DNA of 64,000 nt, from positions 83,088 through 147,087 of the forward strand of contig CDMY01000257.1 of the NCBI GenBank assembly GCA_001179505.1, in the 5' to 3' direction. The DNA comes from Vitrella brassicaformis CCMP3155. Lineage: Eukaryota; Protista; Chromerida. The first letter of the stretch is position 1. Every line of letters begins with the position of its first letter. This document shows positions 38,339 through 58,395 of this stretch, one piece after another. The position numbers were made by a program, and so were the translations under genes. The notes under the pieces were generated by a model. That model was not told the DNA's origin and did not search any database. It was given only the letters and a program-made list of their open reading frames with translations.

Positions 38339-38649
38339 GTGCTGAGGGTGCGGCGGGCCCGGAGGAGGAGGACGAGAGCGATGGGCGCGGCAGACATAAT
38401 GAATGGGTCAGCCCAACACGGCAAAAGAAAGACGCGTTCGCCGTGCCGCTTCTGCCTTTCTTACTGCTTTTGCTGATGTGTTCTCGCCTGTACACTCCTT
38501 CAAGCGATCCACTATGCGAGCTAACCCCAGATCTCCTCCCTCTGGATGAATGGAGGCTCTTTGAGGACAGCCAGACAGTGATCCATGCTATCGTAAACTG
38601 TCCAAGATCCGAAACTCATTCAGCAACGTACAGCTTTTGGTTCATCATC

Positions 38650-41600
38650 ATGAGTCAACGTCCTACGCCTCATTCGCTGAGATCCAGCAACCTCTTCTAC
38701 CCCGCCCGCACCATTGGCCTGGTGACCGACCGCATTCCCTTCCAGTACTCACAGATGGGCAACGACGCCTTCCTGGTGGTGAGCGTCGGGCGAGCATACC
38801 AGGTCATGGATGCCCGCAGGCTGCGGCTGGCCTACATCGGCCACCAGGGCGGCGACAAGATCAGGGCCATGTGTGCGGACAAGGAGACGGTGTTTGTGGC
38901 CGTCAAGCGGGACATCGTGGGCTACAGGCGGCTCAAGGAGGTGAGGAGGAGGGACTGGCTGGCAGATGGATGGATGGATAGATCAGCAGTGTGGATGCAC
39001 TCGCCGTGCTCTCCCTGTCTGTGTATTTCAAGGTCCATCGGTTTTCGGGTCACCGCAAGTCTGCCAGCGGTCTGCATCTGTTTGGCAGGACACTCATGTC
39101 CTGGAATGAGAATGAGCTCAAGTTCTGGGACCTTGACACAAGTACACGAGAGAGCAGAAAGAAGATGCCATCCGTCCTTCTGCTCATTGTACTCGTCTGT
39201 TTGTCCATTGTCTGCAGACGCTGAGGTTCCCTCCCCCGCCCTCCCCGCCGATTTCTCCATCTCGTGTCTGCTCCACCCGCCCACCTACCTCAACAAGGTC
39301 CTCATCGCATCCACCGCAGGCGACCTGCAGATCTGGAACACCCGCACCCTCGAGCTCATCCACCACCTGACATGCATCCCCACAGCAACCACCGGCACCC
39401 GCGACACTGTCACGTGTATGGTCACATCCCCTGCTTTCGACGTGGTGGGCGTCGGCTTTGCGTCTGGGCGGATCGTTGTGTGTGACATCCGGAAGGACGA
39501 GGTGCTGATTGAGTTCCGGCAGCAGCAGGGGGGCGTGACGTGTCTGGCGTTCCGATACGACGGCGTGGGAATGCTGGTCAGCGGGGCGACTGGGGGCGAG
39601 GTGGTGGTGTGGGACCTCGACAAGCAGCAGTTCCACAGCACCGAGGAGAATGCGCATGCGGGGAGGGTCGTGCAAGCGACGTTCTCGTCTGACGGGCCGT
39701 TCCTCTTCACACAAGGTGCGTGTCGGACAGGGGAAGGTGTGAATCTGTGTTGCTAGAGTGTATTTGGCTGCAGGTGAGGACAATTCGATCGTCAAGTGGG
39801 TGTTCGACCGGGCGGACGGCGGCATGCGGGAGGTCAAGGCGAGAAGGGGACACATCGGGGCCGTCCACCACCTGGCATTCTACGGTCAGCGACTATCCTA
39901 ACGCCCCTGGCGCATTCACCAATTTCATCCATTCGTGTGTATTGGTGTGTGTCATCCTGCAGATGACGAGGGCAAGGAGCTTCTGTCGTGCAGTACTTTC
40001 GACAACAAGGGCATACTCGGTAGGTAGCCGACGCACACACACATCACCGCACGAACACACACGAGATGTCTGTTTTGCTTATACCGTTCATTCAGGCAAG
40101 ACGTCGTTCATCCAGCAGCACCAGAACCTCCATTTCAGCCAGAAGGCCCTCAGGAAGCGGCACGACAAGTGGAGCCCGCCCCATCAGCACCTGCCGCCCA
40201 TCGTCGATGTGGCCTTTGCGTACTCACGGCACTTCGACTGGCCCAACGTCGCCACCGTCCACAAGGGTAGACCAGATCGGGGGCAGATCAGATCGTTCGT
40301 GTGCTGACAATGCGGTGTGGCTTCTTGCAGGTGAGCATGAAGTCTATCTGTGGAGCGGACACGACAAGACTCTCGTAAGTGATGGCGGACAGCACACAAA
40401 GCCATCCTCAGCCCACCTATCTCTCCCTCATGATCAGGTGCCGCGGACGCTCTCGCTTCGTCACGAGAAACAGCGGCCGCCCACCCTGCCCGCGGCCACA
40501 GCAGTGGCCATCAGTGGCTGCGGCAACTTCGCTGTCGTGGGCTACGAGGACGGCCAGATGCATCGCTATAACCTGCAGTCCAGCCTGCACCGTAACAGCT
40601 ACTTGCGGAAAGACAGTGACGTAAGCAGAGAGAATTATGTGCCGAATTGTGTGAGAGTATCGGTGGATGGGCATCTGTTGTTGTCTGTGCAGTGGTCGGA
40701 TCGGGCCCACCGGTCTCGCGTGAGCCACGTGGCCATCCTGCACTCGCAGACGCTGCTGTCAGCCTCCAACCATCCAAAGGTACCAACAGGGACAAAGCCA
40801 CCCAGTGGATCGATCTCCTGTGTCACCTCCCCGTCTCTCTCTGGCCTTCCAGGACATTTGCCTGTGTGTGTGGAGCCTCCACAGCCACCAGCTGGAGCAT
40901 GAGATCGCCATCCAGCCCACGACAGCACCGGCCGGCCCCGTCACCATGTTTCGCTGCATGGGGGTGCTCGCCGCTGTCGCACTCACGAGTGAGCGGGGGC
41001 GTTGAACACGTGGCAATGATATGGATCGGTCCATTCGGTGGTGTGTGTGTTGCTGTGTGTAGGTGGCGTGGTGTGTGTGGTGGACCTGCAGTCTGAGAGC
41101 GTTGTGAGAGAATTCGGAGGGCTCACAACCGTCACGGACCTGGCATTCAGGTGAGCGATGACAATGCAGCGTCCTCAGGCAATGGAGCACCGTTTGCCCA
41201 TGACGGTGTCTGTGATTCACTCAGTCCTGACGGTCGTTGGCTGGCGGTTGGTTGCATCGACAGCTGTCTGTACGTGTATGACCTGTTCGCCTCTTCCCTC
41301 ATCGACTGGGTGCGCTTCCAGTCGCCCCCACTCGCCGTGGTCTTCGAACCGAACGGGGTCTTCCTTCTCACATCACACACACACTCCAAAGGTGAGCTCG
41401 GCTCGGCTAGTGGGGCCAAGGAACGTCGCTGCTTCTGATGCGCCTGTCTGTCTGTCTGTCTGTCTCTGTCTGTCTGTCTCTGTTTGCAGGTGGGACCTTC
41501 GTGTGGGCCAACAAGCACGTCTTCGACCCCTACCTGCGCGCCCCCCTCCTCAGTGGCGTCCCCACACAGCCCATCGACATTGAGGAGCCCACCATCACCA

Positions 41601-42706
41601 AGCAGGTCGCTGACGATGAGGGAGAGGATCTGACCGAGGAGAAAGACGGGCAACAGGAGACAGATGGGGTGGAGCCGGCTCATGGCGACGAGGTCGAGAA
41701 TGGGGGTGTCGTGGAGCCTCTGCACGAGGGCGCTCTGACGCTGTCGGGCGTGCCGCAGGGAAAGCTCCAGGCCATCCTCTACCTCGAACAAATCAGAGAG
41801 AGGAACAAAGTGAGAGCAAACAGACACGGACAAGCAAGCATGGCTTAGTACTTCTGCACTCTTCTCCCTTCCTTTGCCCTTCTCAGCCCCGCGAGCCGCC
41901 CAAGCCTCCGCCGAAGGCCCCCTTCTTCCTGCCCACTCGCTACGAAGGCGTCGACCTCAAATTCGCCCCCCTGGCTGCCGACGAGGCACTCGTCGAGGAT
42001 GAGGAGGGAGGGGAAAGCGAGCGTGCTGAGCAACCAACTGCCAAGCGAGTGCGGCGGTCAGCGAGTGGGATGACGGCATTTCAGCGTCTCGTGAAGAAGG
42101 GCAAGTACGATGCGATGCTGAATGCGTTGAAGGGCATGACGCCCTCTGGGGTGCACGTGGCGTTGTCGCAACTGGGGCCGCTGGCAGGGGGGACGATCAA
42201 GGAAGTAAGGGAAGAGGGAGTGAGAGGGCAGTGAGTGCTGAGAAAATGGCACCGTTGTCGTCACGTGCAGATAATAAGTGTCTTGGGGTTCTTTGAGCAC
42301 TACCTCGATCGTCGTGATGAGGCCGACCTGATCCAGACGCTGCTGTACACCTTCCTACAGGTAGGAATGCCACACGCAGCGACGGGACAGATGGGAAAGA
42401 GGTAGGTCAGTCAGCTTGCCCGCTCTTTGTGTCAGTTTCACCACCACTGGCTGTTTGGTGACCCCGACCCCTCGACCGACCCGAGCGAACACGCCGCTCT
42501 CATCGACGCCGCCAGCCGTGTTGTCAGCCGACTTGACGATGACTGGAAGGTGCTGGACCACCAGTTCCAGCACCTGTTCTGCTCTATCAAACTCCTGACA
42601 CACCTGCAGGTGAGGTGATAAAAAAACTGGCTGGTCGGTGCATGTTTGAATGCGGCCTCTGTGTGTCTTGTATCTTGTGTCTGCATCTCTGCAGATGGAG
42701 ACTTAG
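38650..42706 (+). CDS. UTP21: U3 snoRNA-associated WD40 protein Utp21/WDR36 (UTP-B complex)
   Basis: SNLFYPARTIGLV...VPF-like start, HPPTYLNKVL, WD repeats, C-terminal PFFLPT, GVHVALSQL, FFEHYLDRRDEADLIQTLLYTFLQ|FHHHWL. Last mini-exon MET* at 42695-42706. Confidence 0.9.
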
Positions 42707-43056
42707 AGAGTGAGCATGGTGTATGTGTTTTGCGTTGTCAGGGGAACGGATCGTGTGCATAGAGCGTGACGCATAAGGGGTGTGGTGAAATCCGCCATTT
42801 GACGTACGATTGCAAGAAGCGCGACTTGGTCTACATGAGACACATTCATTCGTCAGATATATGAATCGGAATGGTACAATAAGCAATGAGCATGAGTCAG
42901 ACAGTCAAGTGGATAAGAAAACCGAAGCAGCAGCAGCAGCTCGCGCGAGCAGGGAGAGCCGTCGTCGTCTAGCGCAGCGTTTCCCGCGTCTGTGGCGGCA
43001 CAGAACGAGACGAATGGGGAATACGGAGGGAAAGAGGGAGAGGCCGAGGGGGGCTG

Positions 43057-43872: not shown

Positions 43873-44157
43873 TCAGCAGTTGAGGAGGCAGTCATCCTCA
43901 CATATCTCCCTCTCTTCGCTGTCTTCCTCATACAAGAGCTCGCAATCCTCGTAGCAGCAGCACTCTCTATCCGGATCATCGAAACAGTCCTGCACACGAC
44001 AAGGTGATGGACACGCTCAACCCATGGCGCTCAATTGACGAAAATCCTCTTCTGTGAGCGTCCTTACAACTTGCTCCGGCGAAGCTCTTCCAAGCGCAGG
44101 GGGCACGTGTGCTGCCAGGAGAGCCACAAGGGCAACGACGAACCACAGGAACCTCAT
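43873..44157 (-). CDS. Small secreted acidic Cys-rich peptide, copy 1 (68 aa, 8 Cys)
   Basis: Exon 1 44157-44068 MRFLWFVVALVALLAAHVPPALGRASPEQV; intron GTAAGG...GTGCAG (44067-43990); exon 2 43989-43873 DCFDDPDRECCCYEDCELLYEEDSEEREICEDDCLLNC*. Confidence 0.85.
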
Positions 44158-44258
44158 ACTTGTGAAGTGACAGCCAGCCACCAGATGCACACTGTAGAAT
44201 TCAGCTTGTAAACACACTGACGGCCGTTGGGACGTATTCGCACTTTGCAGTTTTCTGT

Positions 44259-44372
44259 ATGCTTCCGTGGTTTCCTGCGACTGTGTTGGTCATCTTGCTG
44301 AGTCAATGGGAGAGGAGGGGTGCTGTGGCTCAGTTCACGACGGCCTGCCTGAGCAACAACAACAGAACAGAC
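44259..44372 (+). pseudogene. Truncated first exon of the large secreted protein, fused out of frame to UTP21-derived DNA
   Basis: MLPWFPATVLVILLSQWERRGAVAQFTTACLSNNNRTD matches 45805 onward, then switches at about 44373-44381 to sequence matching UTP21 at about 42045. Confidence 0.75.
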
Positions 44373-44380
44373 CACTGTCT

Positions 44381-45045
44381 AGCGAGTGCGGCGGTCAGCG
44401 AGTGGGATGACGGCATTTCAGCGTCTCGTGAAGAAGGGCAAGTACGATGCGATGCTGAATGCGTTGAAGGGCATGACGCCCTCAAGGATTCACGTGGCGT
44501 TGTCGCGACTGGGGCCGCTGGCAGGAGGAACGATCAAGGAAGTAAGAAGAGAGAGAGAGAGTGAGAGGGCAGTGAGTGCGAGGAAACGCCACCGTTGTCG
44601 TCACGTGCAGATAATAAGTGTCTTGGGGGTTCTTTGAGCACTACCTCGATCGTCGTGATGAGGCCGACTTGATCCAGACGCTGCTGTACACCTTCCTACA
44701 GGTGAGAATGCCACACGCAGCGACCTGACAGATGGAAAAGAGGTTGGTCAGTCAGCTTGCCCGCTATTTGTGTCAGTTTCACCACCACTGGCTGTTTGGT
44801 GACCCCGACCCCTAGACCGACCCGAGCGAACACGCCGCTCTCGTCGACGTCGCCAGCCGTGTTGTCAGCCGAGTTGACGATGACTGGAAGGTGCTGGACC
44901 ACCAGTTCCAGCACCTGCTCTGCTCTATCAAACTCCTGACACACCTGCAGGTGACGTGACAGTAGACAAGATGGCGGGCGTGTCTGTGGATGCGGCCTTC
45001 TGTGTCTTCTATCGTGTATCTGCATCTCTGCAGATGGAGACTTAG
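44381..45045 (+). pseudogene. Duplicated 3' exons of UTP21 with a frameshift
   Basis: Aligns to 42045-42706. An extra G in TTGGGGGTT (vs TTGGGGTT) turns IISVLGFFEHY into IISVLGVL*. No 5' part present. Confidence 0.85.
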
Positions 45046-45405
45046 AGAGCGTGTATGTGCTTTGCGTCGTCATGAAGATAGGTCGTGTGCATAGGACGTG
45101 ACACATAAGGCATGGAAGTGAGCATTTCGAGTCTGCGGTTGTCAAACTCTCTACCAAAAAGTAAGTAAAAAAGTCAGTGACGACGCCATTAAGACAGCAC
45201 GACAAGAAAGGGCCATCGACCAATTACCCCAGACAGACCAGACAGCACATCCATGGGCACAAGCGAGTCGCCCGTACCGCAGAGGCAGCCTGGCAGGGCT
45301 TCCTTCTCACTTCACAGCTACATCATCGCATCCTAACACTACACACTGACACTCCCTGGCTTCCGCCATCCCACTAGTTGGCCCCACCTCGCTTGAGGTG
45401 TGCCA

Positions 45406-45696
45406 TCAGCAGTTGAGGAGGCAGTCATCCTCACATATCTCCCTCTCTGGGCTGTCTTCATCATACAAGAGCTCGCAATCCTCGTAGCAACAGCACTCTC
45501 TGTCCGGATCATCGAAACAACATATGTCCCCGTTCTCATCGATGCAGTCCTGCACACGACAAATTGATGTACACGCTCAACGACAACCCTCTTCTGTGAG
45601 AGTGCTTACTTGCTCCGGCGAATTATTTCCAAGCGCAGGGGGCACGTGTGCTGCCAGGAGAGCCACAAGGGCAACGACGAACCACAGGAACCTCAT
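45406..45696 (-). CDS. Small secreted acidic Cys-rich peptide, copy 2 (76 aa, 10 Cys)
   Basis: Exon 1 45696-45610 MRFLWFVVALVALLAAHVPPALGNNSPEQ; intron GTAAGC...GTGCAG (45609-45550); exon 2 45549-45406 DCIDENGDICCFDDPDRECCCYEDCELLYDEDSPEREICEDDCLLNC*. Confidence 0.88.
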
Positions 45697-45804
45697 ACTT
45701 GTGAAGTGACAGCCAGCCACCAGATGCACGCTGTAGAATTCAGCTTGTAAACACACTGACGGCGACCGTTGCGAATTTAGCATTGCTGAATTGCAGTTTT
45801 CTGT

Positions 45805-48800
45805 ATGCTTCCGTGGTTTTCTGCGACTGTGTTGGTCATCTTGCTGAGTCAATGGGCGAGGAGGGGTGCTGTGGCTCAGTTCACGACGGCCTGTCTGAGC
45901 AACAACAACAGAACAGACGATGACGGACAGCCGACAGAAACAAACGCAGACTGCCAGCCGGGTAAGCAAGGAAGAACACGCCATCATGCAGGCTCGTTCT
46001 GTTTCTGATCTTCTTCAGCCGTCCTCCCGCGCGGTGAGATCGCCGCGGCGTGCGAGGCCAATGCGCTGCTGCCCATTGTCGACGACCCCGACCTCGGCAA
46101 CTTCGGCCAGTGCTTCTTTGAGAATACCACAAGAAGACTACTCAAGGAGCAACAGACAGATGCCCTGACCACCGATGAGGAGACCGCCGGCGACGTGAGC
46201 GCATCAGGAGAGAATCAGTCCATTATCTGTGGAGAGCCCAGTGTCGTGGAAGATGGCAATATCACGGCGGCGGCCCTCGGCACTGCGGCACTGGGAAGGT
46301 ACGCATTGCTCGTCTAATGTGATGGCACCATCATTCTTTCGCGCGCCTGTCTGTCAGTTGCCCGTCGGACAAGCCCATCTGCGCTCGCACGAGCGACTCC
46401 CGCTTCTGCTACTGCATCGAGGAGGAAGTGGGTCTGTTCGGCGACGTCGCGAACTTCTCGCGCGGCGATGTCAGCCTCGTGCTGGGCGTCGTCAGCGGCC
46501 AGCCATCGTCTCTGTGTTTCCCGGCCGAGCTGGATCCGTGCTTCAATGCAGTCAACCGCTTCGCCGTGCCCTTCGACTGTGCGGGCAGCCTGCCCGTCGT
46601 CGAGAGAAGGGAAGACATTGGGCCCGATGCAAGAGAGCAGAGCTTCATGCCGAACGACCCGCCTCCCGTGCCACAAGAATCGACGTTCGCCCAGCTGGTG
46701 CCCGGCACTTACCTGTTCGAAGACGTGAGCTCTGACGCCTACCTCGACACCATCGGCAACACGGGCACCAATGTGTCGAGCTGCATGAGGATTCAGGGCA
46801 AGAGTGACGATGATAGTGGGCTCGATGATTTTTTCCTCGACCTGTCATGCAACACGACAGAGGGCGTCAGCATCACTCTCCAGTTCACCTGCCCCGAGAC
46901 CGGCCTCTGCTCGAATCGAGCCGGAAACGCCCTCCAGCCTGCAGTCGCCACCATCCAGGGCGTGCTGCAGGTCGAGCAGGCCAGCAATCCGGCGTGCGAA
47001 GGGATTGAGGCGCAGATCGAGGTCACCTTGACGGGCTTTGTGGACGAATCGGAGTCTCTCATCGCTCAGCAATTCGAGTACGACACGAACCAGCGCATTC
47101 TGATCTTCGGCAACGAGACACAGGACGATCTTGTCACTGCACGCGCGATCGGCATTCTCTCGCCCGCGGCCAACACGAGTCTCGGCCTCTTGACGTTCCC
47201 CGATGATGTGCCTGACGAATGTGATGTCCTGCTCAACCAGCGAGTGTTCACAGTGACGTCGGGGCAGACTGAGGCGGGCGGCATCCTTGCACTGGCTGCC
47301 TCCGGATTTGGAAGGAACCTGACGAATGGCGGAGATATCCGAAAGGTATGTTCATTCTTGCTAAGATCGCCACACACGTGTGATGTGTGTGTGTGTGTGT
47401 GTTTCTGTGTTTTCGCATCCTCAGAACCCGTTGGAGATCAGTCAATATGCTGTCGAGAATCGAGATGCCTTCCGGGAGTGCAGTGATCTTTGCGACGAAG
47501 TGGAAGAGGAAAGGAGTTTCGTTTTTCTCGGCCCCGACCGGCGCCGTGCCCTTCTAGGAGAAGTTCTGCCGACTATCTTCTTTCCCATCTACCAGCCGGA
47601 GCAGTCGCCAGACCTGTCGTTCAGCAGTTTCTTCATTGGGGACTCTTTCTTTACAGAAACGACCCTCAAAACCACAGCGTGCTCGGGCGACGAGCGATTC
47701 AATAGGAGTACCAAAAAGGTATCTGCTTTGTGCGCTGAGGCTCTGGACCCTGAGAGGCCCCGATCGTTTGAGCTGTTTGACCCCGAGACAGGCGTGTCGC
47801 TTGATTTTTTTCTGAAGGGCCAACTTGGCAATTTGATCGATGGGAGAGAAGGTACATGTACCAAGCAGCCAGTCGGCCGCCTGACAAGGATGTTTGCATC
47901 TTTTGGTCTCTTGTCGATTGTGTATTGAGCAGTCTTAGCCAATTGCCGAGGGCCGAGGCTGCAAGACCTTCCTGTTGGTGTGCACCCCGGCAGAAACGCG
48001 CCTTTCAGAAGTCAGATTTTGAACTTCGGACGTGGCTTCGACCTTATTGGCGAGACTGTGGGCGTCGCCCTCGCACCAGGCGCTGGAGTCCTCGGAAACG
48101 ATACGTGTGTCAGGGCCAATCTGGAAGGGAGACATACTTGTGCGGATATTGAGGAAGGAGGCGGGCAGAGTCTCAATATTACCATCCAGCTGCTGCAAGG
48201 GGACGATCTTGACACGTCGAGGTGCATTGGGCCAGCGCAAGAACTCCTGGAGAACGCCCGATTGTGTAAGATCGGGTTCGAATGCTGTAAGCAATCAGAA
48301 CAAGTCACAGCTCGCTCCCTGTCGCTTTCAGCCTGTCCATCATGTTGTTGCTTTGTCGTATCTTGTGCTCGTGTCAGTTGAGGCCTGTCCTGAAGTCAAC
48401 TTGACCGCCCCATCTACCGCCCAGCCATCAAGCTATTTTCTGACTGACCCTCCTGCGGAAGATGTCAATGGCACAGATGTCAGCTACTGCCTCGAGATAG
48501 AAAACACTCCAGGTGCAGAGGACTTCCGAGCCCTTTTCAGCTGCGACCCGGACGAGGAGGGGGTTGGTTTGCAAGTGCAGATCAAGTATGACGTTGCTGA
48601 GCTGGATGGACGCGTAGCGCCGATACTCGACGAAACGACAGGGGAGCTGGAGACAGTGGACTTTGCAAATGTGGACTTTAAGGGCGCAGTGAGGCAGGTG
48701 TTTCCCGAAGAGTGCAATGGCACGTTGATGTTTGTTGAAGGTGCGCACACACATATACACGGCAGACAGAGAGACAGATAGACAGACAGGCAGCCAGACA

Positions 48801-50008
48801 GACAGACAGACAGACGGACGGACGGGGAGACGAACGGGCAGGCAGTTAGGTAGGCAGACATGCAGAGAGATGCTCAGCCACTCGGCGACTTGGGATATTC
48901 GGTTGTTGCTGTCGTGTTCTCCTCATGCAGGCACTCTTGTTGGCGGCCTTCTTTTTCAACTGAGCCCTGACGAAGAGCCCCTTGATGGCAGGTACCTCCC
49001 CACCGTTACGCGCTTCGAAAAGGCTCCTGAGATACTCTTCACGAGTAGCGCACCGTTGGGCACCATGGAGTATGTAATTGTTCAAGGCCTGGATCCCAGG
49101 TTCGTCGACGATATCCCGGCCGAGTGCTTCAATCTCACGCAGAAGCTCACTCACATAAAGAGGGCGAGGGTTGAATCTATCGACGACCCGACAGCATTCG
49201 CCTTTAATGTGCCTGGAGTAGAGGTCCATGAACTGACAGATGAGGGCGAGACAGCGGGTGTGTTGGAGGTCGTCACTCGCTCTCCAAGAATCCGTGTATA
49301 CGAGGAGCAGAGGGAAGAAGGGACGGTGCCGAACAGCTTCTTGTCAGAGATTAGGGGGCCTCTGCGTGAAGTCTGTGGAATCAAGGAGATAGGTGCGCAG
49401 AACGTGCATGGATGTCGACACGTATATTCACTGATGTTGCGTTTGCCCTCTGATCCAGACTCTACTGGCATTGCTGTCCAAATCCAATGCCTCCCTCGCG
49501 AGCCCTTCGAGGTGACCGCTGGCGAGCCTGGCCTGAGGCTTACAAGAGAGCAAATCGAGTAACACACGATTTAAAGGGAGAAGAAATCCACAGGGCCTTT
49601 ACTGTGTTGATGTGTGTCTTCAAGTTCTATTGCCCAAGTTGTGACAAACGATGGTAGCACGCCCAGGCTCCAATCGCCGGCCGGCTACAGGCTCAACTGC
49701 TCATGCGACGACCTCGAGCGCATCAAGAATGAGACCAATGGCGGCGACGGGTTCATTGTGCGGACGGTTCCGTTGTTTGTCGACACTGGTGTTGAGGAAG
49801 AAGAGGTGGAGCAGCTCTGCCCTGTGCTTATCAGATGCGGTACGGCGGCAAGAGAGAAAGACAATGGGATGTCTCAATCGATTCGATTCGGTTTTCTCTA
49901 TCAGAGCCGCCAACTGGGACAGACACGGCGGGCTGCGATGCGATTGACCAGGAGATGTCATCGGTGTCGAGTCGCGATGCGCTGTCTCTTGTCAAGACTC
50001 GTCCCTGA
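45805..50008 (+). CDS. Large secreted acidic Cys-containing glycoprotein, copy A (about 10 exons, roughly 1,100 aa), unknown family
   Basis: Signal peptide MLPWFSATVLVILLSQWARRGAVA. Canonical introns keep the frame (first 45962-46018). Many N-x-S/T sequons and an RRLL motif. Ends ...VLIRC|EPPTGTDTAGCDAIDQEMSSVSSRDALSLVKTRP*. Collinear paralogue at 54117. Confidence 0.8.
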
Positions 50009-50043
50009 CTGGCTGTGGCCGGGTGGACAGGTGGACTCACATG

Positions 50044-50343
50044 NNNNNNNNNNNNNNNNNNNNNNNNNNNNNNNNNNNNNNNNNNNNNNNNNNNNNNNNN
50101 NNNNNNNNNNNNNNNNNNNNNNNNNNNNNNNNNNNNNNNNNNNNNNNNNNNNNNNNNNNNNNNNNNNNNNNNNNNNNNNNNNNNNNNNNNNNNNNNNNNN
50201 NNNNNNNNNNNNNNNNNNNNNNNNNNNNNNNNNNNNNNNNNNNNNNNNNNNNNNNNNNNNNNNNNNNNNNNNNNNNNNNNNNNNNNNNNNNNNNNNNNNN
50301 NNNNNNNNNNNNNNNNNNNNNNNNNNNNNNNNNNNNNNNNNNN
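50044..50343. other. Assembly gap (300 N)
   Basis: Run of N. Confidence 1.
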
Positions 50344-51243
50344 TGTAATTGTTCAAGGCCTGGATCCCAGCCTCGTCGAGGACATTCCGGAGGAGTGCTT
50401 CAATCTGACGCAAAAGCTGATTCATAGGAAGAGGGCCAGGACAACTGTGCAAGAGGACGGCGACGTCAGGACAGCATTCGCCTTTAATGTGCCTCAAGTG
50501 GAGGTCCATGAGCTCACAGATGAGGGCGAGCCAACGGGTGTGTTGGAGGTCGTCACTCGCTCTCCAAGAATCCGTGTATACGAGGAGCAGAGGGAAGAAG
50601 GGACGGTGCCGAACAGCTTCTTGTCAGAGATTAGGGGGCCTCTGCGTGAAGTCTGTGAAATCAAGGAGATAGGTGCGCAGAACGTGCATGGATGTCGACA
50701 CGTATATTCACTGATGTTGCGTTTGCCTTCTGATCCAGACTCTACTGGCATTGCTGTCCAAATCCAATGCCTCCCTCGCGAGCCCTTCGAGGTGACCGCT
50801 GGCGAGCCTGGCCTGAGGCTTACAAGAGAGCAAATCGAGTAACACACGATTTAAAGGGAGAAGAAATCCACAGGGCCTTTACTGTGTTGATGTGTGTCTT
50901 CAAGTTCTATTGCCCAAGTTGTGACCAACGATGGCAGCACGCCCAGGCTCCAATCGCCGGCCGGCTACAGGCTCAACTGCTCATGCGACGACCTCGAGCG
51001 CATCAAGAATGAGACCAATGGCGGCGACGGGTTCATTGTGCGGACGGTTCCGTTGTTTGTCGACACTGGTGTTGAGGAAGAAGAGGTGGAGCAGCTCTGC
51101 CCTGTGCTTATCAGATGCGGTACGGCGGCAAGAGAGAAAGACAATGGGATGTCTCAATCGATTCGATTCGGTTTTCTCTATCAGAGCCGCCAACTGGGAC
51201 AGACACGGCGGGCTGCGATGCGATTGATCATCCGTATTACTGA
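50344..51243 (+). CDS. 3' part of a third paralogue (copy C) of the large secreted protein, 5' end in gap
   Basis: VIVQGLDPSLVEDIPEECFNLTQKLIHRKRARTTVQEDGD differs from copies A and B, then becomes near-identical to A. Distinct last exon EPPTGTDTAGCDAIDHPYY*. Confidence 0.65.
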
Positions 51244-51460
51244 AGGCATGTGTCTGTGGATTGCAACCTCGGCCTGCTCTGCACTTCCAGTTTGCCCAGA
51301 CAAATGCTAGGTATGTACTTGTTATGAGACGCGCTGCTGTGCTCTTTGTGCGTAATGTTTTTGTCGACAAGCCATGGACGTACTCATGAATTCTGGTCGA
51401 CATGAGACACATTCATTCGTGAGATGCGTGTGAATCGGTATGGTACAATCAGCAATGAGC

Positions 51461-52013
51461 ACACACTCCAAAGGTCAGCTCTGCCAGTGGGGCCAAGGAA
51501 CGTCGCTGCTTCTCGTGCGCCTGCCTGTCTGTCTGTCTGTCTGTCTGTTTGCAGGTGGGACCTTCGTGTGGGCCAACAAGCACGTGTTCGACCCCTACCT
51601 GCGCGCCCACCTCCTCAGTGGCGTTTCCACACAGCCCATCGACATTGAGGAGCCCACCATCACCAAGCAGGTCGCTGACGATGAGGGAGAGGATCTGACC
51701 GAGGAGAAAGACGGGCAACAGGAGACAGATGGGGTGGAGCCGGCTCATGACGACGAGGCCGAGAATGGGGGTGTCGTGGAGCCTCTGCACGAGGGCGCTC
51801 TGACGCTGTCGGGCGTGCCGCAGGGAAAGCTCCAGGCCATCCTCTACCTCGAACAAAGCAGAGAGAGGAACAAAGTGAGAGCAAACAGACACGGACAAGC
51901 AAGCATGGCTTAGTACTTCTGCACTCTTCTCCCTTCCTTTGCCCTTCTCAGCCCCGCGAGGCCCCCAAGCCTCCCCCGAAGGCCCCCTTCTTCCTGCCCG
52001 CTCGCTACGAAGG
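51461..52013 (+). pseudogene. Internal UTP21 fragment (copy of about 41380-41950)
   Basis: GGTFVWANKHVFDPYLRAHLLSGVSTQPIDIEEPTITKQ...LQAILYLEQSRERNK aligns to UTP21 exons with substitutions. No start present. Confidence 0.8.
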
Positions 52014-52313
52014 NNNNNNNNNNNNNNNNNNNNNNNNNNNNNNNNNNNNNNNNNNNNNNNNNNNNNNNNNNNNNNNNNNNNNNNNNNNNNNNNNNNNNNN
52101 NNNNNNNNNNNNNNNNNNNNNNNNNNNNNNNNNNNNNNNNNNNNNNNNNNNNNNNNNNNNNNNNNNNNNNNNNNNNNNNNNNNNNNNNNNNNNNNNNNNN
52201 NNNNNNNNNNNNNNNNNNNNNNNNNNNNNNNNNNNNNNNNNNNNNNNNNNNNNNNNNNNNNNNNNNNNNNNNNNNNNNNNNNNNNNNNNNNNNNNNNNNN
52301 NNNNNNNNNNNNN
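52014..52313. other. Assembly gap (300 N)
   Basis: Run of N. Confidence 1.
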
Positions 52314-52856
52314 AGCCCTTCGAGGTGACCGCTGGCGAGCCTGGCCTGAGGCTTACAAGAGAGCAAATCGAGTAACACACGATTTAAAGGGAGAAGAAAT
52401 CCACAGGGCCTTTACTGTGTTGATGTGTGTCTTCAAGTTCTATTGCCCAAGTTGTGACAAACGATGGTAGCACGCCCAGGCTCCAATCGCCGGCCGGCTA
52501 CAGGCTCAACTGCTCATGCGACGACCTCGAGCGCATCAAGAATGAGACCAATGGCGGCGACGGGTTCATTGTGCGGACGGTTCCGTTGTTTGTCGACACT
52601 GGTGTTGAGGAAGAAGAGGTGGAGCAGCTCTGCCCTGTGCTTATCAGATGCGGTACGGCGGCAAGAGAGAAAGACAATGGGATGTCTCAATCGATTCGAT
52701 TCGGTTTTCTCTATCAGAGCCGCCAACTGGGACAGACACGGCGGGCTGCGATGCGATTGACCAGGAGATGTCATCGGTGTCGAGTCGCGATGCGCTGTCT
52801 CTTGTCAAGACTCGTCCCTGACTGGCTGTGGCCGGGTGGACAGGTGGACTCACATG
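52314..52856 (+). repeat. Apparently identical copy of 49501-50043 (3' end of copy A)
   Basis: Same bases at offset 2813. One copy ends exactly at a gap and the other begins exactly at a gap. Confidence 0.85.
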
Positions 52857-53735
52857 GATAGAGGAAGCTCGTGAGACACACCGTCAACCCGTCGGCCATA
52901 CCTGAAAGGGGCCTTTCGTCAGGCGAGAGCTTTGTGTTTTTCCTGTGATCGCATTCTCTGCGGCACGTACGTCAGCCACACACGCATGTGTGACCTGCAG
53001 CAGGGTATGCAAAGCGAATCACACAGCACCTTTGTAGCCTGATGTATGCATCAAACGCACGTCGGCTCTCTCTTTGTGTGTGTGTGTGTCTTCTCGCTGC
53101 TCGGCTACATGTATATGTGTGTACGGACGAGCACAGCAATGGCGTATTTGTTGGCAAAGCAAGTGAGCAGTCGACCTCCGTATTGCTATCGATGCATGCT
53201 GTGTTTGTGGGCTGAAACCTCGGCCTGCTCTGCGCCTCATTTGGTGCTGGATATGTGTGAGAATCTTTCCCATGCTGCGCATTTTGTGCATGGCGTCGCT
53301 GGAGGCGAGGCATGAATTGACAGATGATCAACCACCAACTCGTCCGCACGAGAAATGTACACGGTAAGACTCCGATACAAACCAGCAAGCACCACAGGCA
53401 CGTAACACCCAGACACACACCCGATTCAGGAACACCGAAAGAGGATCGCGGCGCCCACAGGCGGCACGGCACGTACCCAGCTAGCAATGCAGAATCCCGA
53501 TTGCGATGAGGGTCCGTGCATTTTCTTCGCATGGTGTGTGGATTCAGTCAGGCCATCCCTCCCTCGCACCTTACGCGTGTATACAAACCGAAAAAGTAAG
53601 TCAACAAGTGACGACGCCATCGACGCAGCACGATGCAAGACGATTAACGACTAATTACCCAGACATTATCACCTCAATGCCTGCCCGCAGCTTGGCTCAC
53701 TGTCTGGGAAAGATCAGCACGTGTGTGAGAAAGGA

Positions 53736-54025
53736 CTAGCAGCCCCGGTCACAATCCGACAAACACACGGTCCTGTCGCGTCCCGACAACTGTCCACAAT
53801 CGTCGTCGCAGCAGCATAGTAGGTTGGCATCACACATACAATCCGGGAGAGGAGGACAGCGCTGCACACATACACACACATGTCCAGGGAGGTTCATCTG
53901 GTGAGCACTGGCTGTTGTGGGCACTCTGTTGCGATTGCGTGTGCTTGCTGCTTGCGCACCTGCCCGAATACAGGGGATGCTGCGAGGAGAGCCACAAGGG
54001 CAACGACGAACCGAAGGAACCTCAT
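53736..54025 (-). CDS. Small secreted Cys-rich peptide, copy 3 (divergent; about 63 aa, 10 Cys)
   Basis: Exon 1 54025-53960 MRFLRFVVALVALLAASPVFGQ; donor GTGCGC; exon 2 53861-53736 RCPPLPDCMCDANLLCCCDDDCGQLSGRDRTVCLSDCDRGC* after the same GTGTGCAG acceptor. An upstream acceptor (CACCAG) is also possible. Confidence 0.82.
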
Positions 54026-54116
54026 GATTACGGCCGCTTGTCGCACCCGTACACTGTGTAAACACTCTTCTCGACCGTTGCGGCTCTTGTACCGCTGTGG
54101 TTTGTGTATTCTCTGT

Positions 54117-57100
54117 ATGCTCGCGTGGCTTCCTGCGGCTGTGTTGGTCATCTTGCTGGGTCAATGGGAGAGGAGGGGTGCTGTGGCTCAGTTCACGACG
54201 GCCTGTCTGACCGGCAACACGAGAGAGACCGACGACGGACGGCCGACCGAAACAAACGCAGACTGCCAGGCGGGTAAGCACAACAGGGGGCACGTGAACA
54301 ACAAGTGGATGCGAATGCCTTTCCTTTCTTCAGTCGTGATTCCTGGCGAAGATGGCGATGAGATCTTCTATTCGAGTTGTGAGGCAAATGCGCTGCTGCC
54401 CATCGTCGACAACCCCGACCTGGGCAACTTCGGCCAGTGCTTCTATGAAGATATCGCCCAGGAAGACCTCAAGGAGCAACAGGAGTATGCGCTGAACAAT
54501 GAGGACTCGGATACTTTCGGCAATGTCACTGCGACCAGCGGCAACCAGTCCATTATCTGTGGCGAGCCGAGCGGCGTCACTGGCACAAACATCACCGATC
54601 TGGGCACTGCGGCACTGGGAAGGTAGGAACTGCTCAATGAGTATGGCACCGTAATTTCGTGCTCCTGTCTGTCAGTTGCCCGTCGGACAAGCCCATCTGT
54701 GCCCGCACGAGCGACTCACGGTTCTGCTACTGCATCGAGGAGGAAGTGGGTTTGTTCGGTGACGTGGCCAGCTTCTCGCGCGGCGATGTCAGCCTCGTGC
54801 TGGGCGTCGCCAGCGGCCAGCCATCGTCTCTGTGTTTCCCGGCCGAGCTGGATCCGTGCTTCAATGCAGTCAACCGCTTCGCCGTGCCCTTCGACTGTGC
54901 GGGCAGCCTGCCCGTCGTCGAGAGAAGGGAAGACATTGGGCCCGATCCACGACAGCAGAGGCTGCTGCCGAATGACCCGCCCACCGACCCACAAGAGGCG
55001 ACGTTCGCCCAGCTGGTGCCCGGCACTTATCTCTTCGAAGACGTGCGCTCGGGTGCCTATCTGCCGACCATTGACAACGTGGGCACTGGCAATGTGCCGA
55101 GCTGCATGAGGATTCAGGGCAAGAAGAACGACAGCAATGGGCTTGATGATTTTTTCCTCGACCTGTCATGCAACACGACAGAGGGCGTCAGTGTCACCCT
55201 CCAGTTCACCTGCCCCGAGACCGGCCTCTGCTCCAATCGAGCCGGCAACGCCCTCCAGCCTGCAGTTGCCACCATCCAGGGCGTGCTGCAGGTCGAGCAG
55301 GCCAGCAATCCGGCATGCGAGGGAATCGAGGCGCAGATCGAGGTCGCCCTGACGGGCTTCGTGGACGAGTCGGAGTCTCTCATTGCCCAACAATTCGAGT
55401 ACAACCAGACTCAGCGGATTCTGATCTTCGGCAACGAGGAGCAGGACGACCTCGTCACTGCACGCTTGATCGGCATTCTCTCGCCCGCGGCCAACACGAG
55501 TCTCGGCCTCCTGACGTTCCCCGATGACGTGCCTGACGAATGTGATGCCCTGCTCAACCAGCGAGTGTTCACAGTGACGTCGGGCCAGACCGAGGCGGGC
55601 GGCATTATCGGGCTGGCTGCCTCAGGTTTTGGGCGAGACGTGGAGAGCGGCAATACCATCCGCAAGGTGCAGGCTTGGGCCAGTGGCTCACTCTCTCCCC
55701 GTCCAGCAATGACGAATGCCCGTGTCTCTCTCTGTGTGTTCTTAGAGGCCGTTGGAGTTGAATGAGGATGCCAAAGCCAATCGAACAGCGTTCTTGGACT
55801 GCAGCAATTTCTGCGTGCGGGCGGAGCAAAGCAGAGATGACGATGAGGCGGTCGGAAACAGAGACACAGAGGACAGCGAACTCGTCTTTCTCGGGAAGGA
55901 CCTGGGCCGTGCGCTGCTTGGAGAAGTCCTGCCGACCATTTTCTTTCCCATCTACGAGCCCGGAAAGTCACCAGACCTGTCGTTCAGCAGCTTCTTTCTT
56001 GGGGACTCTTTCTTTGCGAGCACGACCCTCGATACCACAGTGTGCTCCGGCGACGATCGATTTGATGGGTTGCCACTCCCGGCGTTAGCTCTCTGCACTA
56101 AGGCCCTACCAGAGGCGCCTCGATCCTTTGAGCTCTTCGATACGGAGACAGGCACCCAGCTTGACTTCATCATCAAGGTACACCATTTCACACAACACCC
56201 GTACATCTGTCCGTCTCTGTGCTGCCCCTGTGTGAAGGGCCAGCTGGGAAAGCTGATCGATGGGAGACAAGGTACATGAACCAGGCAGTCAGACAGCACA
56301 CGGCCATCAGTGCCTGTCTTGTTGCTGATGTGTCTCGAAGTGTTGACTAATTGCCGTGGGCAAAGGCTGCAAGACCTCCCTGTCGGTGTGGACCCTGGAG
56401 GAGGGTCACCCTTTCTCTTTAATCAGATCTCCGGCCGGGGTATTGGCGAGACTGTGGGTATCGCCCTCGCACCCGACGCTGGAGACCTCGGAGGCAATAC
56501 GTGCGTCACAACCAGACAAAGAGGGGACAAAAGAAGGCTGCATAGTTGTATGGGGATAATGGAGGACAGGGAGCAGAGCGTGAACGTTTCCATCCTGCTG
56601 CGGCCAGGAAACGGCAGTGAGACGGCGGGGTGTTCTGGTGGAGGGGGAAGAAATCTTACAGATCAAATAATGGAGGAGGCAGACATATGCTTCATCGGAT
56701 ACACCTGTTGTAAGGCTTTCATGAACCCTCGCTCTTAACTATTTTCGTTTTTTGATGTTTGCTTCCCTTCTCTTTATTTCAGTTGAGGCATGTCCTCAGG
56801 TCAACTTGACGACCACACCCCCTACAGCCCAGCCGTCGAGCTATCTTCTGACGGACCGCCTGAGCGAGACGACCAATGGCGCAAATGTCAGCTACTGCCT
56901 GGAGCTGATCGATGAGGACTTCCGAGCCCTTTTCACTTGCGACCCGGACGAGGAAGACCCAGACGAGGAAGGGGTTGGTTTGCAAGTGCGGATCAGATAC
57001 GACGTTGCGGAGCTAGACGGACGCGTTGTCAACATCATAGACAACACGACAGGGGAGCTGGCGACCGTGGACGTTGCGAATGTGGACTTTAAGGGCGCAG

Positions 57101-58395
57101 TGAGGCAGGTCTTGCCCGAAGAGTGCAATGGCACGTTGATGTTTGTTGAAGGTGCGCACACACATATACACGGCAGACAGAGCGACAGAAAGAAAGAAAG
57201 ATAGACAGACAGACAGACAGACGGACGGACGTCGAGAGAGACCGAGAGATGCTCAGCCACTCGGAGACTTGGGATATTCGGTTCATGCAGGCACTCTTGT
57301 TGGCGGCCTTGTTTTTCAACTGAGCCCTGACGAAGAGCCCCTTAATGGCAAGTACCTCCCCACCGTCACACGCTTTCCAGCGGTCCCTGAGATATTGTGG
57401 ACGAGCACCGCGTCACCGGGAGAAATGGAGTATGTAATGGTTCAAGGCCTGTATCCCAGCTCCGAGGACATCCCGAAGGAGTGCTTCGATCTGACGCAGA
57501 AGCTCACGTACAGGAAGAGAGCCTTCGTTCTCGAAGACGGCAACCCCAAGCCACGAACATCGATTCCTCTTGTGGAGGTTGCTGAATCGGAGGCTGAGAG
57601 CGATAAGATGGACGTCGACACTTTTGGGTGGTTCCGTGTGTACGAGGAGCAATCAGAAGGAGGAAGGGAGCAAAGGAACTTTAGATCAAGGATTGAGGGG
57701 ACTCTGTGGGAAGTGTGTGGAATCCAGAAAATAGGTGCATCATACATGGATCTCTCGACACGTGTACCCGCTTGTGCTTGCAGTGCCTTCTGATTCAGAC
57801 TCTACTGCTGTCCAAATCCAATGCCTCCCTCGCGAGCCCTTCAAGGTGACCGCCGACGCACCAGGCATCGAGCTCACCCAAAAGCAACTCAAGTAACACA
57901 ATTGGAGAGAGGATTCCACATGAAGTTTATCGTGTCTGTGTGCTTGTCTTCTTTCTTCAAGTTCTACTGCCGAAGTTGTGACCAACGATGGCACCACGCT
58001 GAAGCTTGAATCGCCGGTCGATTTCCTCACCTGTTCATGTAACGACCGCGAGCGCATTAAGAATGAGACCAATGGCGGCGATGGGTTCATTGTGCGGACC
58101 GTTCCGTTGTTTGTCGACATCGACCCCAAGGTTGAGGGAGAAGAAGTGAAGCAGCTCTGCCCTGTTCTGATCGATTGTAGTACGCTGGAAGAAAGGACAC
58201 AACCATGAGGACACGGGTCGTCTTATCCTTTTCTTCTCTTCTTCAGAGCCGCCGACTGATGGGGATGCAAGCTGCAAGCCGAGTGAGATGGCGCTGAGAC
58301 GTCTTACCGTCTCTCTTCTGAGGCCTCGGCCGTTACACAAGGCGATACAACAGGGCAGCGGCGGGGCAGAGCAAAGAAGTCGAGGACGTGGATAA
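54117..58395 (+). CDS. Large secreted acidic Cys-containing glycoprotein, copy B
   Basis: MLAWLPAAVLVILLGQWERRGAVAQFTTAC.... Exon structure and Cys positions are collinear with copy A (SCPSDKPICARTSDSRFCYCIEEEVGLFGDV...). Ends ...GAEQRSRGRG* at 58393-58395. Confidence 0.8.

What the first reader, a model, noticed from the sequence alone, without database searches (positions are those of the whole stretch)
43873..58395. Two-gene module: Cys-peptide head-to-head with a large secreted glycoprotein, duplicated as a unit
Each peptide gene faces a copy of the large secreted gene, with 101 bp (44157/44259), 108 bp (45696/45805) and 91 bp (54025/54117) between start codons. Both products carry signal peptides. 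The arrangement survives in the strongly diverged third module. This suggests co-transcription of two co-secreted partners, such as ligand/carrier, inhibitor/enzyme, or peptide plus scaffold for a cyst/sporangial wall. The parallel divergence of peptide 3 and copy B would fit partner co-evolution. This is my best candidate for an undescribed system in the window. The function is inference.
Basis: partly seen in the sequence, partly recalled or inferred. Interest (0 to 1): 0.85.

Follow-up and report, generated by a model that had tools for sequence, protein, structure and literature searches.

The report
Co-duplicated secreted peptide and protein gene pair
The coral-reef alga Vitrella brassicaformis carries at least nine copies of a back-to-back gene pair, found in no other organism, that encodes a tiny six-cysteine secreted peptide and a very large secreted protein; the pairing is real and conserved, but whether the two products work together is untested.

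Summary
The window is Vitrella brassicaformis CCMP3155, contig CDMY01000257.1. Three two-exon genes for secreted six-cysteine peptides lie head-to-head with a large-gene start, exactly 101, 108 and 91 bp between start codons.

Only two modules are complete:
- pep2 with copy A (45805-50008, intact, about 1149 aa)
- pep3 with copy B (54117-58395, 1186 aa, splicing confirmed by RNA contigs)

Module 1 pairs pep1 with only a 114-nt stub of the large gene. Both assembly gaps lie after copy A's stop codon, not inside any coding sequence. The DNA between them is unresolved repeat.

The same cassette occurs six more times on three contigs. Every intact member of the closely related subfamily that could be checked has its peptide partner (7 of 7). 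Two distant paralogues have none. Both genes are under purifying selection (dN/dS 0.2-0.6). Neither family has any relative outside Vitrella, any Pfam domain, or a confident fold.

Best reading: a lineage-specific cassette copied as a unit around a short shared promoter. Cognate binding or co-evolution is not shown; parallel divergence is what co-duplication alone predicts. Other first-reader notes of this scan (s1-201668, s1-231203) describe such cassettes on other DNA of this genome. Interest is moderate.

The parts
43873..44157 (-). pep1 gene (CEL97867.1, 68 aa as annotated). Exon 1 runs 44157 to about 44068/44071 (signal peptide); the intron is about 78-81 nt; exon 2 runs 43989-43873 including the stop. 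The mature peptide is about 44 aa with 8 Cys, 18 acidic and 3 basic residues.
44158..44258 (.). 101-bp spacer between the pep1 and stub start codons; inferred divergent promoter
44259..44372 (+). 5' stub of a large gene: the signal peptide plus the conserved motif QFTTACLSNNNRTD. Homology to the large-gene family ends at 44372.
44374..45110 (+). Duplicated copy (90% identical) of 42037-42778, which holds 3' exon(s) of the upstream Utp21/WDR36 gene. It marks the junction of a tandem duplication of about 2.3 kb.
45406..45696 (-). pep2 gene (CEL97868.1, 76 aa). Exon 1 runs 45696-45610; the intron is 60 nt; exon 2 runs 45549-45406 including the stop. The mature peptide is about 53 aa with 10 Cys.
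45697..45804 (.). 108-bp spacer between the pep2 and copy A start codons; inferred divergent promoter
45805..50008 (+). Large gene copy A. An intact ORF of 10 exons, about 1149 aa (1154 aa if the other intron-8 acceptor is used), with 40 Cys and 19 N-glycosylation sequons. No assembly gap lies inside it. Its splice sites were mapped from copy B. It lacks B's intron 4.
50044..50343 (.). Assembly gap 1, 36 nt after copy A's stop codon
50344..51230 (+). 3' fragment of another A-like large gene, 95% identical to 49073-49950. A transcript of this type (peptide motif CEIKEI) appears as a loose end in both RNA runs.
51460..52013 (+). Copy (94% identical) of the Utp21 exon at 41378-41948
52014..52313 (.). 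Assembly gap 2
52314..52856 (+). Exact (100%) repeat of 49501-50043, the 3' end of copy A. This is the signature of a contig break caused by a repeat.
53736..54025 (-). pep3 gene; absent from the public protein set. Exon 1 runs 54025-53960; the intron 53959-53862 (98 nt) is seen as a joint in RNA contigs; exon 2 runs 53861-53736 including the stop. The product is 63 aa; the mature peptide is about 42 aa with 10 Cys.
54026..54116 (.). 91-bp spacer between the pep3 and copy B start codons. pep3 RNA reaches at least 54041, leaving at most about 75 bp for promoter elements.
54117..58395 (+). Large gene copy B: 11 exons, 1186 aa, 40 Cys, 17 sequons, pI 4.3, and no hydrophobic segment after the signal peptide. 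Exons: 54117-54273, 54334-54622, 54676-55666, 55746-56177, 56238-56271, 56341-56709, 56783-57151, 57291-57734, 57784-57892, 57962-58179, 58247-58395.

Best explanation
This is a real two-gene cassette specific to Vitrella.

The two genes:
- One gene has two exons: a signal peptide, an intron after a conserved Gln codon, then a short, fast-evolving region ending in six invariant cysteines (CC-C-C-C-C). It makes a secreted, probably disulfide-knotted peptide of about 40-55 residues.
- The other gene lies 63-272 bp away on the opposite strand. It has 10-11 exons and makes a secreted orphan protein of about 1150-1190 residues. That protein is acidic, has 40 cysteines and 17-19 N-glycosylation sequons, and has no membrane anchor.

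History: the pair formed once, in the ancestor of one 'crown' subfamily of the large gene. It was then copied as a unit at least nine times, both in tandem and to other contigs.

Inferred mechanism: the short spacer acts as a shared divergent promoter. Any duplication that carries the large gene with a working promoter therefore also carries the peptide gene. Each copy of both genes is then kept by purifying selection. Both products enter the secretory pathway and probably act outside the cell. The peptide most likely acts as a signalling- or defence-type peptide in its own right, not as an obligate subunit of its neighbour.

Shown: the arrangement, its conservation, the splicing of module 3, the selection, and the restriction to Vitrella. 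Inferred: promoter sharing, secretion, and an extracellular role.
For: - Coordinates and spacing.
- Organism: only seven cluster representatives in 1.84 billion proteins, all with E < 1e-30 and all from Vitrella.
- Further cassettes, with bp between start codons: L002a 63, L002b 64, L001a 133, L001b 205, L005b 272, L007 99.
- Six invariant Cys across six peptides.
- The intron sits after Gln in six of the eight modules examined.
- In the tree, ten crown copies are separated by a long branch (support 96/98) from two paralogues that have no peptide partner.
- dN/dS is 0.22-0.57 for A versus B and about 0.25 for the peptides.
- RNA contigs of two studies show spliced pep3 and spliced copy B. DNA contigs of two other studies span pep3, the spacer and B's start.
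- Head-to-head pairs under 1 kb are over-represented across the Vitrella genome (PMC4501334).
- Peptide genes remain intact beside a stub and beside a truncated large gene.
- One peptide gene (P0011) holds three tandem six-Cys units, each preceded by DDxPxRRL. This is the layout of a multi-copy peptide precursor.
Against: - No transcription start sites were mapped, so promoter sharing is only inferred. The spacers are not alignable beyond close copies, apart from a short GTAAA-like motif.
- Seven of seven intact crown large genes kept an intact peptide, at synonymous divergence up to about 0.8. All nine peptide copies, each different from the others, survive. That is more retention than redundant, independently acting peptides would be expected to show, and it leaves room for a pair-specific function.
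- Contig depth suggests pep3 RNA exceeds copy B RNA by about 4-fold in one run and about 25-fold in the other. The tool warns that depth from contigs is a poor measure of expression.
- Expression of pep1, pep2 and copy A itself was not tested.
Confidence: 0.5

Rival explanations
1. Cognate partner pair. Each peptide binds the large protein encoded next to it, as ligand and carrier, inhibitor and enzyme, or recognition pair. The cassette is kept together because matched alleles must be inherited and expressed together, and the peptide co-evolves with the variable C-terminal two-thirds of the large protein.
For: - The pair is retained at all seven intact crown large genes, and no peptide family member was found away from a large-gene copy or remnant.
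- The mature peptide is the fastest-evolving part (dN 0.55 for pep2 versus pep3) while its six Cys stay fixed.
- The large protein has a conserved N-terminal exon (89% identity between A and B) and a much more variable remainder (58-79% per exon between A and B; 30-50% between clades).
- Four of the five acidic-type peptides fall in one well-supported large-gene clade, but the fifth (L007) is unresolved and the CFANC type does not form a single clade.
Against: - Co-duplication alone predicts the same tree and parallel divergence.
- dN/dS is below 1 everywhere, so no sign of an arms race in pairwise tests.
- pep1 is intact next to a stub, and P0011 expanded to three units next to a truncated 380-aa large gene.
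- RNA depth of the two partners differs, and the ratio is not constant (weak evidence).
- No interaction test was possible.
- The peptide searches were limited by query length and shared words, so lone peptide genes elsewhere in the genome cannot be excluded.
Confidence: 0.28
2. Structural pair of the cell or sporangium wall. The large glycoprotein is a wall or surface matrix protein, and the very acidic cysteine-rich peptide cross-links it or caps it through disulfides or Ca2+.
For: - Both products carry secretory leaders.
- The large protein has 40 Cys, 17-19 sequons, no anchor and pI about 4.2.
- The window's peptides carry 18-20 acidic residues in 44-53 residues.
- The modelled parts are mostly beta strand.
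Against: - There is no match to any known wall or adhesion domain. Pfam gave nothing at E up to 5, a PDB profile search gave nothing, Foldseek's best E was 0.18, and VIA-align's best Z was 4.0.
- Acidity is not conserved. The CFANC-type peptides of the other copies are near neutral.
- No proteomic or stage-specific data were available.
Confidence: 0.12
3. Assembly artefact. The repeated modules are collapsed or mis-joined haplotypes rather than real paralogues.
For: Three 300-N gaps lie in or beside the array. A 543-bp stretch is repeated at 100% identity across two gaps. A contig fragment of uncertain placement lies between the gaps.
Against: - Modules 1 and 2 differ by 8-10%, and copies A and B by 18-30% at the DNA level. 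That is far beyond allelic differences.
- Contigs from independent DNA runs span pep3, the spacer and B's start.
- The same cassette recurs on other contigs.
- Copies A and B are both intact ORFs.
Confidence: 0.03

Closest known systems
Brassicaceae S-locus pair SCR/SP11 and SRK (from general knowledge, not tested here)
   Same: A small secreted cysteine-rich peptide gene is tightly linked to a much larger partner gene. The two are inherited as a unit, and the peptide diversifies rapidly around a fixed cysteine framework.
   Different: SRK is a membrane receptor kinase with known domains. The large protein here has no membrane segment, no kinase and no recognisable domain. The S-locus varies as haplotypes at one locus, whereas these are paralogous copies within one genome. 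There is no sequence similarity, and binding is untested here.
Divergent (head-to-head) gene pairs with a shared bidirectional promoter, for example histone H2A-H2B pairs or paired plant NLR genes; the general excess of head-to-head neighbours in chromerid genomes (Woo et al. 2015, PMC4501334)
   Same: Opposite orientation, a spacer of 63-272 bp between start codons, and duplication of the pair as one unit.
   Different: Both products are secreted orphan proteins. Co-regulation is not demonstrated, and the spacers share almost no conserved sequence.
Multi-copy secreted peptide precursors cut at basic or RRL-type sites (apicomplexan TEXEL/PEXEL processing; fungal Kex2-processed repeat proteins)
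   Same: In the sister cassettes, peptide P0011 has three tandem six-Cys units, each preceded by DDxPxRRL, and P0008 has one such unit.
   Different: The three window peptides have no RRL motif and a single unit. Cleavage has not been tested in Vitrella.
[quoted passage not shown]
   Same: Signal-peptide exon plus a short exon for the mature peptide, a fixed cysteine pattern with hypervariable loops, and expansion by tandem and segmental duplication.
   Different: The CC-C-C-C-C spacing and sequence match no Pfam family. The window's peptides are strongly anionic, unlike typical cationic antimicrobial peptides.

Membership tests
Divergent gene pair sharing a bidirectional promoter | Opposite strands, with 5' ends facing and less than 1 kb apart | tested here: met
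   63-272 bp between start codons in nine modules. pep3 RNA reaches to within about 75 bp of copy B's ATG.
Divergent gene pair sharing a bidirectional promoter | Correlated transcription from the shared region | tested here: inconclusive
   pep3 and copy B are both present and spliced in the same two RNA runs, but only contigs were available. The depth ratio differs between runs (about 25:1 and about 4:1), and transcription start sites are not mapped.
Thyroglobulin type-1 domain proteins (UniRef's automatic name for P0001 and P0006) | Match to the thyroglobulin type-1 domain profile | tested here: not met
   hmmscan against Pfam-A at E up to 5 gave no family for P0001, P0003, P0004, P0005 or P0006.
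Tectonic domain and 4Fe-4S ferredoxin-type domain (UniRef's automatic names for pep2/P0010 and P0011) | Match to the domain profile | tested here: not met
   No Pfam family for P0010, P0009 or P0008 at E up to 10. For P0011 the only match is a meaningless one at E 2.9. The names probably reflect cysteine spacing only.
Known extracellular wall or adhesion folds (zona pellucida (ZP) module, Ig-like or Rib domains, oocyst-wall cysteine-rich domains) | Significant sequence or structural match | tested here: inconclusive
   The models have low confidence (mean pLDDT 39.5 and 55.4). The best Foldseek match was uromodulin at E 0.18; the best VIA-align Z was 4.0; the Atlas TM-score was at most 0.30. 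The PDB profile search gave nothing. A missing match with a poor model does not exclude a known fold.
TEXEL/PEXEL-type processed secreted proteins | An RRL or RxLxE/Q/D motif downstream of the signal peptide | tested here: not met
   Absent from pep1, pep2 and pep3. Present only in the sister-cassette peptides P0008 and P0011.

The most novel reading that the evidence does not exclude
Each cassette encodes a matched, co-evolving pair: a hypervariable six-cysteine peptide and the large secreted protein that recognises, carries or neutralises it. The nine diverged cassettes would then form a repertoire for self/non-self recognition, mating or toxin-antidote function in a free-living relative of apicomplexan parasites. 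It would be built from two protein families with no relatives elsewhere, and would be comparable in logic to the plant S-locus.
Probability: 0.2. Interest if true: 0.85.

Novelty: new variant of a known kind. Interest (0 to 1): 0.5.

Why it matters
Chromerids are the closest free-living relatives of apicomplexan parasites, and their secreted proteins are used to infer how parasite surface and secretory repertoires arose.

Here two orphan families, with no relative among 1.84 billion cluster representatives, are locked into one cassette that has been copied nine times and kept intact each time. If the products interact, this would be a new ligand-partner system in alveolates and a tractable case of co-duplication with co-diversification. 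If they do not, it is a clear example of how a compact divergent promoter makes unrelated genes travel together. That matters for interpreting gene neighbourhoods in these genomes.

The work also adds three unannotated peptide genes, corrects gene models, and flags an unresolved stretch of the reference assembly.

Tried and rejected
- Pfam on exon translations and on full-length relatives found nothing.
- Rfam and tRNA scans of the window found nothing.
- The ESM Atlas feature search on P0003, whole and in two parts, gave no usable hit.
- A PDB profile search with the family alignment gave zero hits at E up to 10.
- AlphaFold2 gave mean pLDDT 39.5 for full-length P0003 with a 17-row alignment, and 55.4 for its last 427 residues. 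Only the last roughly 110 residues reach pLDDT 70-90.
- Fold searches gave only noise-level rows. Uromodulin and other ZP-module (zona pellucida) proteins, small beta barrels and Ig-like or Rib domains were considered and rejected as evidence.
- Internal repeats in copy B: none by self-BLAST.
- Conserved promoter motifs: the spacers align only among close copies.
- A plastid-targeting reading of the leader was considered and dropped. The mature protein is cysteine- and sequon-rich, and the -3/-1 rule places Phe at +2, not +1, after the signal-peptide cleavage site.
- Peptide partners for the distant paralogues P0005 and P0006: none found by frame inspection, pattern search or tblastn.
- Literature: no paper mentions these accessions. 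No Vitrella wall or secretome proteome was found.


Full report
**Identity of the sequence.** The window is eukaryotic, about 58% G+C, and rich in introns. The largest exon of the large gene finds only proteins of Vitrella brassicaformis CCMP3155. pep1 and pep2 are letter-for-letter CEL97867.1 and CEL97868.1, on contig CDMY01000257.1 of 147,087 bp. Rfam and tRNA scans found nothing.

**Check of the observation.**
- The peptide genes have two exons.
  - Exon 1 encodes a leader, MRFL[WR]FVVALVALLAA, and ends after a Gln codon.
  - Exon 2 encodes a short region ending in the stop codon right after the last cysteine.
- For pep3, the 98-nt intron (53959-53862) appears as a GT..AG joint in contigs of two runs that behave as RNA.
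- Nine of copy B's ten introns are seen in the same runs: eight as joints and one (54623-54675) from loose ends. The first intron (54274-54333) is inferred from the sequence.
- Two other runs behave as DNA. They carry 53600-54189 (pep3, the spacer and B's first 73 nt) on single contigs.

**The gaps, tested first.**
- Mapping B's splice sites onto copy A gives an intact ORF from 45805 to 50008, about 1149 aa. Gap 1 starts at 50044, after A's stop codon. No coding sequence of the modules is interrupted by a gap.
- The DNA between A and pep3 is not trustworthy:
  - 50344-51230 is a 95%-identical copy of A's 3' part.
  - 51460-52013 copies an exon of the upstream Utp21/WDR36 gene (41378-41948).
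  - 52314-52856 repeats 49501-50043 at 100% identity.
- That pattern is what a repeat-induced contig break produces. The simplest path is A, then 52857 onwards, then pep3, with the middle piece belonging to a further, unplaced A-like copy.
- An RNA loose end carrying that copy's variant (motif CEIKEI) suggests it is expressed.
- Continuity across the gaps was not tested with reads, because the single read-laying run was used on module 3.

**Module 1 is a stub.** Similarity to the large gene ends at 44372, after 114 nt. From 44374 the sequence copies 42037-42778, which gives weak but positionally consistent matches to the Utp21 C-terminal domain. A tandem duplication of about 2.3 kb therefore copied the Utp21 3' exon(s), the peptide gene and the first exon of the large gene. 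The window holds two complete cassettes and one peptide gene with a stub.

**The cassette elsewhere.** A profile of the conserved exon was searched against 1.84 billion cluster representatives. It found seven proteins, all with E < 1e-30 and all from Vitrella. Their genomic contexts, with bp between start codons:

| Locus | Contig | Spacing (bp) | Note |
|---|---|---|---|
| L002a | CDMY01000257 (same contig as the window) | 63 | |
| L002b | CDMY01000257 | 64 | peptide not annotated |
| L001a | CDMY01000770 | 133 | |
| L001b | CDMY01000770 | 205 | large gene truncated to 380 aa |
| L007 | CDMY01000770 | 99 | peptide not annotated |
| L005b | CDMY01000297 | 272 | |

- L005a is cut by the contig end, and L006 is a degraded fragment.
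- Two distant paralogues, P0006 and P0005 (32-35% identical to B), show no peptide gene upstream. P0006 sits 154 bp head-to-head with an unrelated AAA gene.
- In a tree of the conserved exon, the ten crown copies sit behind a long branch (support 96/98) that separates them from these two paralogues.
- All seven intact crown genes have an intact peptide partner.

**The peptide family.**
- An alignment of six peptides has six invariant cysteines: CC, x2-3, C, x4-13, C, x3-4, C, x3-4, C. A pattern search finds this only at the expected sites, plus one low-complexity hit.
- The peptides of contig 257 and L007 are acidic. pep1 has 18 acidic and 3 basic residues in 44; pI is about 4.
- Those of L001 and L005 are of a 'CFANC' type preceded by DDxPxRRL. 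P0011 carries three such units in tandem, the layout of a multi-copy precursor.
- The window's peptides have no RRL motif.

**The large protein.**
- Copies A and B are 68% identical overall and each has 40 Cys. They have 19 and 17 sequons respectively, pI about 4.2, and no hydrophobic segment beyond the leader. B has no internal repeats.
- Exon 3 is conserved (89% between A and B; 76-86% between B and the other crown copies). The remainder is much more variable (58-79% per exon between A and B; 30-50% between clades).
- No Pfam family, no PDB relative and no Atlas neighbour were found.
- The AlphaFold2 models are poor (mean pLDDT 39.5 and 55.4), and fold searches return only noise.
- The fold and the biochemical activity are unknown. 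UniRef's automatic names (thyroglobulin type-1, tectonic, 4Fe-4S ferredoxin-type) are not reproduced by hmmscan.

**Selection.** Nei-Gojobori estimates:
- A versus B: dN/dS 0.22-0.57 across exons, with dS 0.31-0.82.
- pep1 versus pep2: dN/dS 0.25.
- pep2 versus pep3: dN 0.55, with dS saturated.

Both genes are therefore maintained by selection, and the mature peptide changes fastest. At between-clade dS of 0.65-0.8, a neutral 65-codon two-exon gene would not be expected to stay intact in all nine copies.

**Interpretation.**
- The cassette is real, old enough to have diverged strongly, and copied as a unit.
- Linkage by itself does not show partnership.
  - Genes copied together must show the same tree and parallel divergence.
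  - Head-to-head neighbours under 1 kb are over-represented across this genome (PMC4501334).
  - Other notes of this scan report small secreted peptide genes head-to-head with unrelated genes. I did not check these.
  - Peptide genes survive beside a stub and beside a truncated large gene.
- In favour of something more than passive linkage:
  - Retention is complete (7 of 7).
  - No lone peptide genes turned up in the limited searches.
  - Each peptide is different from the others.
- My estimates are about 0.5 for a promoter-sharing cassette of two independently useful secreted products, 0.28 for cognate partners, 0.12 for a wall-structure pair, and 0.03 for an assembly artefact.

**Novelty.** The proteins are in GenBank as unnamed products. 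pep3 and two sister peptides are not annotated. No paper mentions these accessions. The arrangement is a new variant of a known kind of genome organisation, built from two orphan families.

Noticed in passing
window 38275-42700 (+): The upstream neighbour is a WDR36/Utp21 ribosome-biogenesis homologue (first beta-propeller, E 1.5e-65). Its 3' exons are partly duplicated inside the array: 41378-41948 matches 51460-52013, and 42037-42778 matches 44374-45110. These copies are probably dead exon fragments.
   Followed up: partly
window 47807-47851 compared with 56178-56237: Intron presence differs between paralogues. Copy B has a 60-nt intron 4 that copy A lacks, so A's exons 4 and 5 are fused.
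   Followed up: partly
window 49393-49458 (and the RNA loose end at 57806): In A-type copies the AG acceptor used by copy B's intron 8 is absent. RNA contigs show splicing to an acceptor 15 nt further downstream, which removes five residues relative to B.
   Followed up: partly
window 53736-54025; L002 about 7557-7936; L007 about 5683-5901: Three peptide genes of the family are missing from the public protein set. pep3 among them is supported by RNA.
   Followed up: yes
L001 9089-9795 (P0011, CEM33032.1): This peptide precursor has three tandem six-cysteine units, each preceded by DDxPxRRL. RRL is the motif cut by the Golgi aspartyl protease (ASP5) in Toxoplasma (from general knowledge, not tested here). 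This suggests, but does not show, that several mature peptides are released from one precursor.
   Followed up: partly
L003 4874-8001: The distant paralogue P0006 lies 154 bp head-to-head with an unrelated AAA ATPase gene. This is an example of how common compact divergent pairs are in this genome.
   Followed up: no
window 48732-48860, 57143-57290 and elsewhere: Introns and flanks carry (GACA)n/(GTCT)n tetranucleotide runs that translate as TDRQTDRQ or CLSVCLSV. They create long spurious ORFs.
   Followed up: no
window 58396 to about 59500: An RNA contig that covers copy B's last exons runs about 1.1 kb beyond the stop codon. This is either a long 3' UTR or an overlapping neighbouring transcript. 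The pep3 RNA contig likewise runs at least 600 nt past its stop codon.
   Followed up: no
P0014 (JGI metagenome contig of 3013 bp): A 553-aa protein at least 90% identical to P0004 occurs on an environmental contig. Vitrella or a very close relative is therefore present in a public metagenome.
   Followed up: no
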